The notes under the pieces were generated by a model, which was not told the DNA's origin, did not search any database, and saw only the letters and a list, made by a program, of their open reading frames with translations. A stretch of DNA of 63,353 nucleotides, the filler included, from Octopus bimaculoides (Eukaryota): NCBI RefSeq assembly GCF_001194135.2. It is 6 parts of 6 records of this genome, joined end to end, with 100 filler letters (N's around TTAATTAATTAA, not from the genome) between each part and the next. Parts side by side here need not be neighbours in the genome. Positions count along the whole stretch, not along the records: positions 34,896 to 58,365 come from NC_069001.1; 5 more parts are not named here. One strand, given 5' to 3'. A program made the translations under genes and the position numbers. This document shows, one piece after another, positions 36,471 through 52,503 of this stretch. Every line of letters begins with the position of its first letter. Positions within the stretch are counted from its first letter, which is position 1.

Positions 36471-36641
36471 ATGGTACAGAAAATGGAAATCAACGTTATG
36501 CCAGTGATCGGCGCAGTGTGCTGTTATTGTATACTGCTCTTATACCTGGGCAAGAAATTCTGTTACTATCTTGATTTCTTCTTGTCTATCGTAATTGGAA
36601 CGGTTCTGTTGACGCTGGCACCACAGTTTATAAAAACCCAG
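36471..36641 (+). CDS. Candidate alternative first coding exon (57 aa, two hydrophobic segments), homologous to the exon at 45154
   Basis: ATG at 36471, CAG|GTAAGT phase-0 donor; ends D-x7-G-x7-P-x5-Q like the exons ending at 45390 and 56195. Confidence 0.65.
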
Positions 36642-39600
36642 GTAAGTTATCTTTTAGATCACTCTAAACACCTGGGACCAGAGGCGACGAGCAACGGGCG
36701 AAACCGGTCTTGTTTCATTTTATATTCTATGTTTTCGAAGTCTATATATTTCACGATGCTGTTAAACCCAAGGACAATCTTCATACTGTATCCCTCTGAT
36801 GAAAGGAACCTCGCCTGTTGGGGTACCCCGTCCTATATTTGTCTTTTTCAGACATATATCTACAACTACACCATCCAGTATATTCTTTATATATATATTA
36901 AAAAAACAATTGGGTGTGAATGTAGTGAGCGCGCCGGAGTTATCAGTTGTCTATATTTAGCAGGTCAAACGACGAAGTAGTGGCCTCTTCCTCGTTAGGT
37001 TTGTCTAATTAGTGTTTGCAGCGTGGATTATCGCATAATATTTAGGGACGTTGTTATTAATATACTACGGAAAACGAACTGGAATGCATTAACGTTGGTG
37101 TATTTGAGGTAGATTGACAGGTCAAATAAACACGAAATGCGTCTTCACCCAAATAACCAGGCGTGGGTGGCAGAGAAGCAAGTTGGCGCTTTTTTCTTTT
37201 TATTTCAGTTTGTCCATTCGTCTTTGTATTTTAAAATCTATTGATGCTGACATATTTTATTTTGTGTACAAAATACATCACAATGATTCTGGTCTCAGGT
37301 CCTGATTTATTTAATTCACCCGGTTTAACTTTTAGTTTCCGATCGTATTACAGTATTTCTTAAATTAATTGTAAAACTTTATTCTCAGCTCCTATTGTGT
37401 GTATATTTTAAACCGGATAAAGGCAACGTAAGAGTTTTAAACTGGGTCTTCAGTATCTGACGATGCAATGACATTAATTCAGATAATTTATTGATGTTAA
37501 TATCAATATTTGCTTCACTTTTCAATGACGTTATCATCATAAGCTCCACATCTCGTTTTGTCTATCTTCACGCCTGACAAAAAAACAAAAAAAAATCGTT
37601 ATTTTGCAAGGTGCTGCGTACATTTACGTATCTTTTGTCCTTTTCTTGTTTGTCATTTGACTGCGGACATCGATCCCAGTAATTACTATTAAAGCCTGGT
37701 ACTTCTCCTCTATCAGTTACTTTTTGCCTAACCGCTAAGTTACTGGGACGTAAACAAACTAACACAGGTTGTCAAGTGGTGATGGGTGACAAACAGACAC
37801 ACACACATATTAATACGACTGTTTCGTTCAATTTCCGTCCATCAAATCAACTCATAAAGCTTTGGTTGACCCAGAACTATAGTAAAGGATACTTGCCCGA
37901 GGTGCCACGTAATGGTACTTAACCCAAAAGCATATGGTTGGGAAGCAAATTTATCATCACAGAGCCACACCTGCACTTATATGTATATATATATATAGTG
38001 TTTATTGTTCCGTTATAGTTTAGGATCAATAAAAAAAAAAATGTCTTCCATCCAGTAAGAGATAAACATCATTTAATATTCACAATATTTAAGTAATAGC
38101 TACTGATAGTTTCAGGCAATGGAAACACGATAAAATTGGTAGATTTCTACAACGTGCCTTGTGTCTCTAGGCCGTCTTTCACACTCAGTGTATTGAGCCT
38201 AAAAATTTGTTCGGAGACACAAGGCACATGGTATAAATTTATCGTGTTTCCACGGCATGGTACTATTTGTAGCTCTTACTTAATGTGTGTGTGTGTTGCC
38301 CTACTTGTTCGTCTGAGTAGCCTTGTAAATATAATGTGCTAATTAAAAGAAATTGAGTGAACAGTGCGATTTCGTTTTTCATTTTATCCTCGGTTTTATT
38401 TCGCTTTTTGTATTGACAACGCTTTGAAAAACTCTCACCCCGCCCCGTCTCTTACGTGTATTAATTACCAACGGACATCTTTCTGTAACATATATGTATT
38501 AAACAAATTTAAACGGCTATTTTGTATTTGGAAAAAATAAAGGACTTCAAAAGGAAAAGGGATATATCAAACAATTAACTAAATGTAAGCAATTGTAGTC
38601 TTAGATGTCTTCTGACATAACTAAATAATTGTTTTCTTTGTTTTTGAAGAGTTTCAATAAAGTCGTCTCCCTTCCATAAGCTGACATTTTCATAAGAATA
38701 CAGAAAATCAATTTCGATATTTGACTGGTTGTTATTTTTATTGATTTCATCGAAGGATGGCGGAGAGAGGTTGGTTTTTTGTTGGGATGTGAATTTAGAA
38801 CAACAAAAGACGTAAGCATTTCGAAACAAATGAAAATTGATTGTGAAAAGCTAAATAGGGTTAAAACGATTGGATGAGATCAGAGCCGTAAAAACAGCCG
38901 TTATGCCACGTGGTCGATCGCTTGTTAGAAATAGCAGTTAGAAAAAAAATCTCCCTCGAACCACACCTTTTTTTTTTTTGTTTTATAAGAAAAAAGGTGC
39001 GACATTTTGGATACACTTCGATACACAGCTCCACTATTTCTCACGTCACCCCTCGATGGTGGTTGGGACATGTTTGATAAATATGCTCTGCTGGGTCGGA
39101 GTAAATGTCAATATTTTGCAGACTTTGGAGGTGTAATGTAACGGAGATTTGGTGGTTATTTCGTTCGAGTGACAAGTGACTGACGAAATCGCGAGATCGT
39201 CAGAAGATGCTCAGGGTTCGAATCATGACAATGTCAGCTACATCTTTCTTTTTTTTTTTTTTTAAGGGCCGATAAAGTTAAGTATTAGTCGAGTAAGTGA
39301 GATGGATTTGATAGTCCTAAAAACGTCCTAGAGCTTTTATCTGTTACTTGTTTGAACAATGGCCTTGCTGGAGCACCACCTTGAGGGGGGGGGGGTAGTC
39401 GAACAAATCGACCCCAGTACTTTTTTTTTTAAAGTCCGGTGCTCATATTCTATCGGTTTCTTTTTTTCCGAACCGCTAAGTCACAAGGACATAAACAAAC
39501 CATCACCGGTTGTCAAGCGCGCGATGGGCGTTTTTCAGTTTCCGTTTACCAAATCTACTGACGAGGCTTTGGTCGGCCTGGGGCTTTAGTACAAGATGCC

Positions 39601-39977
39601 ATGGAACTGAACTGGCAATCATAGGGCTGTGAAGCAAGCTCCCTACCGCGCAACCGCGCCTGCACCTGTGAGAAGGCTACAGATAAGACCCTTCGGGATT
39701 ATTACCTAGAGATTATCAGGTTAAGCTGAACAGGTTCCGGTTGACGTGAGAAGCTGTTGGAATTGATAAAGATTGCCATGATACAATCAGATGTCATCCA
39801 AAACCGATTTCATGCATGAAAAATTATTCTCGGCGGAAATAGAAATTATTTGAATTTTTGTGACGAGTGAAAGATTGAACGATTCCAATGAAACAGTTTG
39901 AAATATTTCATTTGATCCGAGTTGCTGACTGGAATGACATTCGCAGACCGAGATGTTTACGGTTTTGTTTAAACGGA

Positions 39978-40076
39978 GTTGCTATGGATACTGCTGACCA
40001 ACCAGATGCATTTGTTTACTTCGCATTGCTATGTAAACAAACGAATCACGTGACAGTAGTTGCTATTGTTTCATGT
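39978..40076 (+). promoter_or_regulatory. RFX X-box-like motif cluster with an E-box and a downstream splice donor
   Basis: GTTGCTATGGATAC 39978-91, ATTGCTATGTAAAC 40025-38, CACGTG 40047-52, GTTGCTAT 40059-66, CAT|GTAAGT at 40075; CpG-richer context. Confidence 0.35.
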
Positions 40077-50700: not shown

Positions 50701-51736
50701 TGTGACAAAAATTAGAAACCATTATTATTATTATTAAGGCGGTGAGCTGGCAGAATCATTGGCAAGTTGGACGAAATGCTTAGCAGTATTTCGTGCATCC
50801 TCAAATCTGAGTTCAAATCCCGCCGAGGTTGACTTTGCTTTTCATCCTTTCGGGGTCAATGAAATAAGTACCAGTTGTGTATTGGAGCCATTGTAATCGA
50901 CTATCCCCATCCCACAAACTTCAGGCCTTGTGCCTTTAGTGGAAAGTCTTATTATTATTATTGTGTTCTCCAGTTCTTGAAAACATTGATGTTTTGGCCA
51001 TGCTGGGGCACTAGTCAAATGTTTCACTAAATGCCTTTGCAGCTTAAGTCTCCCCCTGGTTCCTTGCTTATAATGGGGTGTGTGTATTTCTAGACTTGCC
51101 GTCCACAGAATATTTCAGCAGGGTGTGGCGTGCTTGGGTGAGCTTTAATTTCTTTATGTTTCCTTTTAAAAGTACACATGTTTGTGTAAGTGAAACACAA
51201 ACATAAAATGCACGTGTGTGTGTGTGTGTGTGTGCATAGGTATGTATATGTATGAATGTGTGTGTGTGTGTGTGTGAGAGTACAGATATCAGAGGGGGAA
51301 ACTTCACTTGTGTTGAAAGATTGAGGAAGTGGTAGGGGTATATCTGCTGCCCTTCAGCTAATTTTCTTCTTGTCTCTAGCCAGCTGCCCCCTTTCTCTCC
51401 CTCCTCTCTCTCTCTCCCTCCTCTCTCTCTCTCTCTCTCTCTCTTCCTTTCCTCTATGTATCAGCTTCCACAAATTACAAAGCTGGTANNNNNNNNNNNN
51501 NNNNNNNNNNNNNNNNNNNNNNNNNNNNNNNNNNNNNNNNNNNNNNNNNNNNNNNNNNNNNNNNNNNNNNNNNNNNNNNNNNNNNNNNNNNNNNNNNNNN
51601 NNNNNNNNNNNNNNNNNNNGTGGTGATGGATTCAGTGTGAGAAATACAAAAAATTCCCTTTCTTTTGGTAGGGAATTTTGGGTGCTGGCACATTTCAACT
51701 GTGAAACTATTTTATTATTATTATTATTATTATTAT

Positions 51737-51774
<38 letters not shown>

Positions 51775-52359
51775 TGAAAAACAACAACAAATGTAAAAAT
51801 ACCTTAGGATGATGTAAGAAATTATTATTGGTGGAGGTGGTGGTGGTAACTAGGGCAAGATAGGGACCTGTAATGTATGTGACCCATTTAGGAAGAGAGA
51901 AAGAAAGAGCTGTTTATCACTGTCCTCTCCCCCACGTCTACCAACTGTCCTCCTTAATTTAGGGCCCTAGCTGGGGTAGGTTTTGGGTGTTTGGTGGTAG
52001 GGTGTGGTTCTTGAAGTCATCCTACATCATTGGCTCTTCTTATCTCTCTCATCGACTTTGTTTGTTTGTTGGTTGGTTTGTTATATAAAACATCTCTTGT
52101 AAACATCATCATAACAACCACAATCATCACCATCGGCAACATCATTATCATCATGTTACGCCTATTGTTAAGATTGCCGTTCAAAGATGCAAAGCTCTGC
52201 ATCTGTATGTATGCCTTCATTATAAAATCAGTACCACTTATATAACCAGCTCTTTTAGGAGTCTGCACCCATCCTCCTTCCTTCAAAATATGTGACTTCC
52301 CTTTCTCAGTTTCCATGTTTATTCTTTTTCTTTACACCTGTTCCGTTGATAATTTACAG

Positions 52360-52503
52360 GTTGAGGTTCGTGTTGATGGCGTTCATCTGTTCATGGTTCG
52401 AGCATTTGGTATAATGCTGCTTGGTTCGGCCTATCTTTGGTGGAATGTACGTAACTCCAAAGACATCACCGTCCATACGACCCTGATGTGGGCCAGGGTG
52501 ATG
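52360..52503 (+). CDS. Multi-TM gene exon 2 (VEVRVDGVHLFMVRAFGIMLLGSAYLWW...ARVM)
   Basis: TTTACAG acceptor, GTAAGT donor, 144 nt, phase 0-0. Confidence 0.9.

What the first reader, a model, noticed from the sequence alone, without database searches (positions are those of the whole stretch)
36471..52503. Two homologous, interchangeable-looking first exons 8.7 kb apart upstream of one shared membrane-protein body
Exon 36471-36641 and exon 45154-45390 each start with ATG, encode two hydrophobic segments and end at a phase-0 donor. Both carry the signature D-x7-G-x6/7-P-x5-Q| (LDFFLSIVIGTVLLTLAPQFIKTQ| versus FDLWSMFIYGLIQLFFPFIFIPQ|). Either could splice in frame to the acceptor at 52360. Each sits in its own CpG-richer region. 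I found no downstream exons for the first one between 36642 and 45153. Inference: a duplicated, diverged variable first exon supplying half of the first 4-TM repeat (variable-exon/constant-region logic). Alternatively it is the orphaned start of a lost paralogue.
Basis: partly seen in the sequence, partly recalled or inferred. Interest (0 to 1): 0.75.

Follow-up and report, generated by a model that had tools for sequence, protein, structure and literature searches.

The report
Annotated alternative first exons, octopus gene
The two look-alike first exons are real alternative starts of one uncharacterised octopus membrane-protein gene, but public gene annotation already lists both versions, so this is an ordinary and already recorded feature.

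Summary
The piece is Octopus bimaculoides chromosome CM046621.1, gene LOC106877804. Splicing exon 36471-36641 (E1a) or exon 45154-45390 (E1b) to the shared body reproduces RefSeq isoforms X2 (XP_014782307.1) and X1 (XP_014782306.1) residue for residue. The shared body is 52360-52503, 54768-54836, 56001-56195, 56980-57126 and 57865-58026.

The same E1a-E1b-body layout occurs without gaps in O. vulgaris, O. sinensis and Argonauta hians. In two decapods, assembled mRNA contigs carry either E1a or E1b, never both. They are 99.5-99.9% identical in nucleotide sequence from the splice junction through the 3'UTR.

BLASTP finds no similarity between E1a and E1b. However, both match a profile built only from non-cephalopod relatives (E about 1e-7; 0 of 500 shuffles reach the score).

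All assembly gaps lie in introns and their flanks are collinear with gap-free relatives. The "orphaned paralogue" alternative is rejected. The function of the protein and of the isoform switch remains unknown.

The parts
36471..36641 (+). E1a: distal alternative first coding exon (57 aa; TM1 and TM2; short N-terminal tail). It is the first exon of RefSeq isoform X2.
   Evidence: ATG and a phase-0 donor CAG|gtaagt. E1a plus the body equals XP_014782307.1 exactly. Orthologues are intact in O. vulgaris, O. sinensis, Argonauta, a cuttlefish and a second decapod. dN/dS against O. vulgaris is 0.39. It scores 16.2 bits against the family N-terminal HMM, with 0 of 500 shuffles reaching that.
37137..37181 (+). 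15-codon first coding exon of RefSeq isoform X3 (MRLHPNNQAWVAEKQ). It has a weak donor (CAA|gttggc), and its product would lack TM1-TM2.
   Evidence: An exact tblastn match to the N-terminus of XP_014782308.1. The surrounding 161 nt are 93% identical to O. vulgaris and O. sinensis. No match was found in Argonauta, and no transcript evidence was seen here.
45154..45390 (+). E1b: proximal alternative first coding exon (79 aa). It encodes an N-terminal tail with an N-glycosylation sequon (NYT) and a TPLG beta-hairpin, then TM1 and TM2. It is the first exon of RefSeq isoform X1.
   Evidence: ATG and a phase-0 donor CAG|gtgagt. E1b plus the body equals XP_014782306.1 exactly. Orthologues occur in all five other cephalopods. 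dN/dS is 0.26. It scores 17.8 bits against the family HMM, with 0 of 500 shuffles reaching that. The sequon is present in 5 of 5 species.
52360..52503 (+). E2: first shared exon (TM3 and the start of TM4). Its acceptor is used by both first exons.
   Evidence: ttacag|GTTGAG...GTGATG|gtaagt. The amino-acid sequence is 100% identical to O. vulgaris.
54768..54836 (+). E2b: 23-codon shared exon (GGAAALLAQGFAQFNKASRMTQE), which is absent from the finding's span. It lies 59 nt downstream of gap 54462-54708.
   Evidence: ctttag|GGTGGA...CAAGAG|gtaagt. It is required to reproduce the RefSeq proteins.
56001..56195 (+). E3: shared exon encoding TM5-TM6. It is the internal-repeat counterpart of the first exons and ends with the same D-x7-G-x6-P-x5-Q| motif in phase 0.
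   Evidence: hhalign of repeat 1 against repeat 2 gives probability 99.2% and E 1e-19. E3 scores 18.2 bits against the N-terminal HMM.
56980..57126 (+). E4: shared exon (TM7 and the start of TM8).
57865..58026 (+). E5: last coding exon (TM8 end and TM9), including the TGA stop.
35996..40295 (.). CpG-undepleted domain around and downstream of E1a. It is the candidate distal promoter region.
   Evidence: CpG observed/expected is 1.1-1.3 against a piece median of 0.48. Promoter function is inferred, not shown.
44296..45495 (.). CpG-undepleted domain around E1b. It is the candidate proximal promoter region.
   Evidence: CpG observed/expected is 1.07-1.24. Promoter function is inferred, not shown.

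Best explanation
This is one gene, Octopus bimaculoides LOC106877804, a 9-TM protein of the uncharacterised family DUF8292/PF26941. It has two mutually exclusive, homologous coding first exons.

Transcription from a distal start gives E1a. The E1a donor at 36641 is joined to the E2 acceptor at 52360, and E1b is removed within that roughly 15.7-kb intron because it has no conserved acceptor. Transcription from a proximal start gives E1b, which is joined to the same acceptor across a roughly 7-kb intron.

The two proteins share TM3-TM9 and differ only in the TM1-TM2 hairpin and the N-terminal tail:
- E1a is the canonical short-tailed form of the family.
- E1b carries a roughly 25-residue tail with a conserved N-glycosylation sequon and a TP(L/Y)G hairpin.

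The two exons arose by tandem duplication of exon 1 before octopods and decapods split, and both have been kept since.

Shown here: the exon structure, identity to the RefSeq isoforms, conservation, exon homology, and both splice forms in decapod mRNA. Inferred: separate promoters, the reason E1b is skipped, N-tail glycosylation and topology, and any functional difference between the isoforms.
For: - The window gene range is identical to GCA_001194135.2 CM046621.1, and the two spliced products equal XP_014782307.1 (X2) and XP_014782306.1 (X1).
- In O. vulgaris and O. sinensis the annotated gene range starts at the E1a ATG, and both isoforms are listed. The annotated Argonauta product uses E1a, and an intact E1b lies 7 kb downstream of it.
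- Cuttlefish mRNA contigs comprise 4 with E1a only and 10 with E1b only. They are 99.5-99.9% identical in nucleotide sequence from 6 nt before the junction through the 3'UTR, and their 5' ends are unrelated. One of the runs is Sepia esculenta RNA-seq (PMC10466719). A second decapod shows the same pattern.
- Profile tests of homology support both exons, and the six-frame scan finds only two first-exon copies per locus.
- E1a and E1b form two orthology groups. Identity within a group is 30-91%, and between groups 7-22%.
- dN/dS is 0.39 for E1a, 0.26 for E1b and 0.03 for the body.
- AlphaFold2 gives the same 9-TM fold for both isoforms (pLDDT 91.0 and 91.4; pTM 0.88 and 0.89).
- CpG-undepleted domains lie at both exons.
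Against: - I saw no spliced Octopus transcript directly. Support in Octopus rests on RefSeq models, whose RNA-seq backing I could not inspect, and on conservation.
- dN/dS for E1a rests on only 15 substitutions.
- In Octopus, E1b is immediately preceded by AG (aacag|ATG), so an in-frame E1a-E1b-E2 product is formally possible. That AG is absent in Argonauta, and no such transcript exists among the 16 decapod contigs.
- Promoters are inferred only from CpG content and from the distinct 5'UTRs.
Confidence: 0.9

Rival explanations
1. E1a is the orphaned, decaying first exon of a lost paralogue and is not part of the downstream gene.
For: There are no body-type exons between E1a and E1b. E1a evolves faster than the body, with dN/dS 0.39 against 0.03.
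Against: The ORF, the ATG and the donor are intact in six cephalopods spanning the octopod-decapod split. E1a-to-body mRNAs exist in two decapods. RefSeq X2 uses E1a.
Confidence: 0.02
2. E1a belongs to a separate gene whose remaining exons are hidden in the assembly gaps (41951-42250 and 44693-44776).
For: Two gaps lie between E1a and E1b.
Against: The gap flanks are collinear with the gap-free O. vulgaris locus, where the matching intervals are only about 335 and 309 bp. Gap-free O. vulgaris, O. sinensis and Argonauta loci hold no body-like or E1-like exon between E1a and E1b.
Confidence: 0.01
3. The similarity between E1a and E1b is a chance or compositional resemblance of two hydrophobic exons, that is, unrelated alternative first exons rather than duplicates.
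For: BLASTP finds no alignment. Pairwise identity is only 7-22%.
Against: Both exons independently match a profile built without any cephalopod sequence, with the same G-x3-W-x3-D-x7-G-x6/7-P-x5/6-Q register. No shuffle out of 500 reaches either score, and this holds for all ten cephalopod exons. Both are predicted to form the same TM1-TM2 hairpin of the fold.
Confidence: 0.04
4. Both exons are included in tandem (E1a-E1b-E2) in some transcripts, giving an 11-TM product.
For: In Octopus an AG precedes the E1b ATG, and the reading frame would be kept.
Against: The AG is not conserved in Argonauta. None of the 14 cuttlefish or 2 second-decapod mRNA contigs contains both exons. No such RefSeq isoform exists.
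Confidence: 0.02

Closest known systems
RefSeq gene LOC106877804 (Octopus bimaculoides), isoforms X1, X2 and X3, with orthologue LOC115222861 (O. sinensis) and O. vulgaris CAI9738465/6
   Same: It is the same locus. The two products deduced from the window are identical to X1 and X2. The O. sinensis and O. vulgaris annotations list the same pair.
   Different: Nothing differs. The annotation does not say that the two first exons are homologous duplicates, or how old they are. That is the only addition made here.
Variable-first-exon/constant-body genes (UGT1A locus; clustered protocadherin alpha/gamma). This comparison rests on established knowledge and was not tested here.
   Same: There are several homologous first exons, each with its own start codon and donor. 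Each joins one common acceptor and is presumably driven by its own promoter. Downstream variable exons are removed as intron.
   Different: There are only two homologous variable exons rather than about 9-22, and the number is stable across coleoids. There is no evidence for stochastic or combinatorial choice. The variable part is a TM hairpin within a polytopic protein, not a whole ectodomain or substrate-binding domain.
Pfam DUF8292 (PF26941), an uncharacterised eukaryotic multi-pass membrane protein family
   Same: All cephalopod products carry precomputed PF26941 hits. Eighty-eight representatives were found, including a brachiopod, echinoderms, a tardigrade, bivalves and a red alga. The six-exon structure is shared with a bivalve member.
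   Different: The bivalve locus examined has a single exon 1 within the gene and 10 kb upstream. The E1b N-terminal tail motif was seen only in cephalopods.

Membership tests
Alternative (mutually exclusive) coding first exons on a common body | Two or more first exons, each with its own ATG and 5' splice donor | tested here: met
   The feature is conserved in O. vulgaris, O. sinensis and Argonauta.
Alternative (mutually exclusive) coding first exons on a common body | Each first exon is spliced to the same downstream acceptor, and the two are never found together | tested here: met
   This is direct in two decapods: mRNA contigs share the body and 3'UTR at 99.5-99.9% nucleotide identity, and each contains only one of the two exons. 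In O. bimaculoides the evidence is indirect, through exact identity to RefSeq X1 and X2.
Alternative (mutually exclusive) coding first exons on a common body | Separate promoter or transcription start for each first exon | tested here: inconclusive
   The 5'UTRs of E1a- and E1b-type decapod transcripts are unrelated, and each exon sits in a CpG-undepleted domain. No CAGE, 5'RACE or chromatin data are available here.
Variable-exon arrays of the protocadherin/UGT1A type | An array of many homologous variable first exons | tested here: not met
   The six-frame profile scan finds exactly two first-exon copies per locus in four species.
Variable-exon arrays of the protocadherin/UGT1A type | The variable exons are homologous, arising by tandem duplication | tested here: met
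   Profile HMM and shuffle test. There are two orthology groups.
DUF8292 (PF26941) | A significant match to the Pfam model | tested here: met
   Precomputed PF26941 hits are recorded on the products of this gene and its orthologues. The model is absent from the local Pfam copy, which gave no hit.
DUF8292 (PF26941) | A multi-pass fold with two homologous 4-TM units | tested here: met
   AlphaFold2 predicts 9 TM helices at pLDDT 91. hhalign of TM1-4 against TM5-8 gives probability 99.2% and E 1e-19.
TP53I11 / p53-inducible protein 11 (PF14936) | A match to PF14936 at or above the Pfam threshold | tested here: not met
   The window proteins give no hit at E<=1. Only 2 of 40 family members give weak hits, the best at E 0.013.

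The most novel reading that the evidence does not exclude
The exon-1 duplication is a cephalopod innovation, at least as old as the coleoid ancestor. On this reading it created a regulated switch between two TM1-TM2/N-tail modules on an otherwise strongly constrained 9-TM DUF8292 protein. The E1b form would carry a glycosylated ecto-tail, and the two forms would have different partners, localisation or tissue distribution. In the cuttlefish data, no sequencing run yielded both full-length forms.
Probability: 0.35. Interest if true: 0.35.

Novelty: already known. Interest (0 to 1): 0.18.

Why it matters
It matters little beyond annotation. It shows that the first-stage reader can recover a real alternative-first-exon architecture from raw sequence. 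It adds three points to the database record: the two first exons are ancient duplicates of the family's TM1-TM2 module, both have been retained across coleoid cephalopods, and the exon boundary mirrors the protein's internal repeat. The gene family (DUF8292) has no known function, so a conserved isoform switch is a small handle for future work rather than a discovery.

Tried and rejected
- Local Pfam scan of both isoforms: no hit, because PF26941 is newer than the local copy.
- BLASTP of E1a against E1b: no alignment. Homology had to be shown with a profile instead.
- Search for spliced Octopus transcripts across the E1a->E2 junction: the protein search with E1a+E2+E2b returned only a contig of a close Octopus relative that reads from E1a into the intron. 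Exact look-ups of X2 and X3 returned nothing, because only the longest product per gene is indexed.
- Acanthosepion locus: the DNA was not retrievable because the gene range is 137 kb.
- The newer O. bimaculoides record carries this gene range base for base, so it did not close the gaps.
- PDB sequence search with the family profile: nothing meaningful.
- Literature search for DUF8292, PF26941 and the LOC identifiers: zero papers.
- A tandem E1a-E1b product and a hidden paralogue body in the gaps were considered and rejected; see the rival explanations.
- The global flank identities for E1b and E2 are unreliable because of indels and were not used.
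Full report
**What is in the sequence.** On the + strand, exon E1a (36471-36641) and exon E1b (45154-45390) each start with ATG. They encode 57 and 79 mostly hydrophobic residues and end at phase-0 GT donors (CAG|gtaagt and CAG|gtgagt). Either joins in frame to the acceptor ttacag|GTT at 52360.

The shared body has five exons: 52360-52503, 54768-54836, 56001-56195, 56980-57126 and 57865-58026 (TGA stop). All have canonical AG/GT boundaries. 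The 23-codon exon 54768-54836 is not mentioned in the finding. It lies 59 nt after the gap at 54462-54708 and is needed to reproduce the known protein.

**Identity of the locus.** The gene range 36471-58026 is base-for-base identical to Octopus bimaculoides GCA_001194135.2, CM046621.1.
- E1b plus the body equals XP_014782306.1, "uncharacterized protein LOC106877804 isoform X1" (317 aa).
- E1a plus the body equals XP_014782307.1, isoform X2 (295 aa).

Both matches are exact. A third RefSeq isoform, X3 (253 aa), starts in a 15-codon exon at 37137-37181 that has a weak donor (gttggc). Its product would lack TM1-TM2. The alternative-first-exon reading is therefore already in public annotation. A full-text search for the LOC identifiers, DUF8292 and PF26941 found no paper.

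**Gaps.** None of the six N-runs in the piece touches an exon. BLASTN against the gap-free O. vulgaris locus (L002) shows that the flanks of every gap are collinear with it. The O. vulgaris intervals that correspond to the gaps are about 335, 309, 776, 40, 30 and 1334 bp. tblastn with all exons and a six-frame profile scan find no further DUF8292-like exon between E1a and E1b, or elsewhere, in the gap-free loci of O. vulgaris, O. sinensis and Argonauta hians. Reading-frame continuity across gaps is not an issue, because every gap is intronic.

**Conservation of the architecture.** The order is E1a, then E1b, then the body in each species:

| Species (locus) | E1a | E1b | E2 starts |
|---|---|---|---|
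| O. vulgaris (L002) | 10001-10171 | 25978-26214 | 39427 |
| O. sinensis (L003) | 10001-10171 | 24240-24476 | 37603 |
| Argonauta hians (L001) | 10001-10234 | 17378-17623 | 25607 |

All ATGs, ORFs and donors are intact. In O. vulgaris and O. sinensis the annotated gene range begins at the E1a ATG, and both isoforms are listed. The Argonauta product on record uses E1a.

Between O. bimaculoides and O. vulgaris, dN/dS is 0.39 for E1a (9 nonsynonymous and 6 synonymous changes), 0.26 for E1b and 0.03 for the body. Both first exons are constrained, but much less so than the body.

**Direct transcript evidence in decapods.** Logan contigs of 1.3-2.3 kb with uninterrupted ORFs are spliced mRNAs. One of the runs, SRR20545810, is Sepia esculenta larval RNA-seq (PMC10466719).

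In this cuttlefish, 4 contigs encode E1a plus the body (P0004) and 10 encode E1b plus the body (P0101). P0004 differs at one residue from the matching part of the Acanthosepion pharaonis model. The two kinds of contig are 99.5-99.9% identical in nucleotide sequence from 6 nt before the exon 1/exon 2 junction through the 3'UTR. Upstream of that point they are unrelated. No contig holds both first exons.

A second decapod shows the same pattern: P0100 (E1a type, SRR27666059) against P0002 (E1b type, SRR27666062) are 99.8% identical over 936 nt. This is one gene with two mutually exclusive first exons and distinct 5' ends.

**Are the two exons homologous?** Pairwise they are not detectably similar: BLASTP returns nothing, and identity is 7-22%. 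Non-cephalopod DUF8292 proteins show G-x-K-x-W-x3-D-x7-G-x7-P-x6-Q at the end of their first exon-equivalent. E1a keeps that spacing exactly. E1b keeps it with a one-residue deletion.

An HMM built only from 19 non-cephalopod N-termini scores O. bimaculoides E1a at 16.2 bits and E1b at 17.8 bits (E 4e-7 and 1e-7). The ten cephalopod first exons score 16-39 bits. None of 500 shuffles reached the score of any of the four exons that were shuffled. E1a and E1b form two clean orthology groups across octopods and decapods. The duplication therefore predates that split. A bivalve member (Solemya velum, L024) has the same six-exon structure but only one exon 1 within the gene and 10 kb upstream. Its orthology is uncertain.

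**The protein.** The family is Pfam DUF8292 (PF26941). Eighty-eight representatives at 50% identity were found, including Lingula, echinoderms, a tardigrade, bivalves and the red alga Porphyridium. All that carry a name are listed as uncharacterised.

AlphaFold2 models of both isoforms give the same nine-helix bundle, with pLDDT 91.0 and 91.4 and pTM 0.88 and 0.89. The first exon supplies TM1 and a proline-kinked TM2.

hhalign of TM1-4 against TM5-8 gives probability 99.2% and E 1e-19. It aligns the end of E1 (...P-x5-Q|) with the end of E3 (...YPVWLLRVQ|). The two phase-0 introns therefore sit at equivalent positions in the two repeats.

E1b differs from E1a and from the wider family in its N-terminal tail of about 25 residues. 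The tail carries an N-x-S/T sequon in 5 of 5 species and a conserved TP(L/Y)G hairpin. E1a has a sequon only in Argonauta.

No solved structure is related by sequence. The best Foldseek hit is chain O of the Chlamydomonas Ycf2-FtsHi complex (8xqw; TM-score 0.52, E 0.017). This is a weak lead that I did not resolve.

**Mechanism (part shown, part inferred).** Shown: two first exons, one acceptor, mutually exclusive use, distinct 5'UTRs in decapods, and CpG-undepleted domains at both exons. CpG observed/expected is about 1.1-1.3 at roughly 36000-40300 and 44300-45500, against a median of 0.48.

Inferred: two promoters. When the distal promoter fires, E1b is skipped because it lacks a conserved 3' splice site; the AG before its ATG in Octopus is absent in Argonauta. 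Also inferred: the isoforms differ in how the TM1-TM2 hairpin and the tail interact with partners or with the lumenal/extracellular side. What the protein does is unknown.

**Verdict.** The "orphaned paralogue", "hidden exons in gaps", "chance resemblance" and "tandem inclusion" alternatives are rejected or very unlikely. The feature is an ordinary case of alternative coding first exons derived from an exon duplication, and RefSeq already annotates it as isoforms X1 and X2. Interest is low.

Noticed in passing
window 37080-37240: The stretch holding the first exon of RefSeq isoform X3 (37137-37181) is 93% identical to O. vulgaris and O. sinensis. That is higher than E1a itself (91%) and the surrounding intron (about 85%). 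The ATG, ORF and weak donor are retained. No match was found in Argonauta. It could be a real minor exon or a conserved regulatory element in the distal CpG-rich domain.
   Followed up: partly
window 43291-43355 (+): A U4 snRNA match just above the Rfam gathering score (48.9 bits against 46). It covers 65 nt of a 138-nt model, so it is a truncated U4-derived fragment or pseudogene. It lies in the E1a-E1b intron, next to an interspersed repeat.
   Followed up: no
window 42520-42720, 43372-43544, 50351-50983, 53388-53630, 55369-55566, 56304-56500: Copies of short interspersed repeats (about 150-250 bp) that match many places in the O. vulgaris locus at 70-85% identity. They account for much of the intron sequence and for the intron length differences between species.
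   Followed up: no
L002 50450-50539; L003 48026-48115: O. vulgaris and O. sinensis carry a degenerate partial copy of exon E4 (SALMNWAIILEHAS(R/G)FLITSD(Q/K)CIQLYIR(V/I)) in the E4-E5 intron. It is absent from the O. bimaculoides window, where that intron is about 620 bp shorter.
   Followed up: no
window 36411-36470 against L001 10001-10072: The frame upstream of the Octopus E1a ATG is open. It still reads GGRIE, which aligns with the start of the longer Argonauta E1a (MAGGRIEANIS...). The start codon has therefore shifted about 70 nt between Argonauta and Octopus.
   Followed up: partly
E1a-E1b spacing: window 36642-45153; L002 10172-25977; L001 10235-17377: The distance between the two first exons is about 8.5 kb in O. 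bimaculoides (with two gaps), 15.8 kb in O. vulgaris and 7.1 kb in Argonauta. In the cuttlefish Acanthosepion the whole gene model spans 137 kb.
   Followed up: no
P0005 (Acanthosepion pharaonis CAE1266297.1): The deposited 493-aa model fuses an upstream chitin-binding-domain gene to the E1a-type DUF8292 protein. This is probably a gene-merging annotation error.
   Followed up: no
P0011 (Lingula anatina XP_013383590.1): The 443-aa model repeats a roughly 150-residue block of its second half (starting NYWFGILGTTLWDLGN...) exactly. This is either an assembly or annotation artefact or a very recent tandem duplication of exons.
   Followed up: no
whole protein (model m7a093ea0cb7c): The only PDB chain with a comparable fold is 8xqw chain O (318 aa) of the Chlamydomonas Ycf2-FtsHi chloroplast import motor, at TM-score 0.52, 13% identity and E 0.017. 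The DUF8292 family also has a red-alga member. In addition, 2 of 40 family members give weak hits to Pfam p53-inducible11 (E 0.013). Neither lead was resolved.
   Followed up: partly
downstream of the piece (L009 33178-41556, - strand; likewise L001, L002, L003 and Acanthosepion): A Peptidase_S28 gene lies tail to tail with the DUF8292 gene in Octopus, Argonauta and the cuttlefish. This is synteny conserved across coleoids.
   Followed up: no
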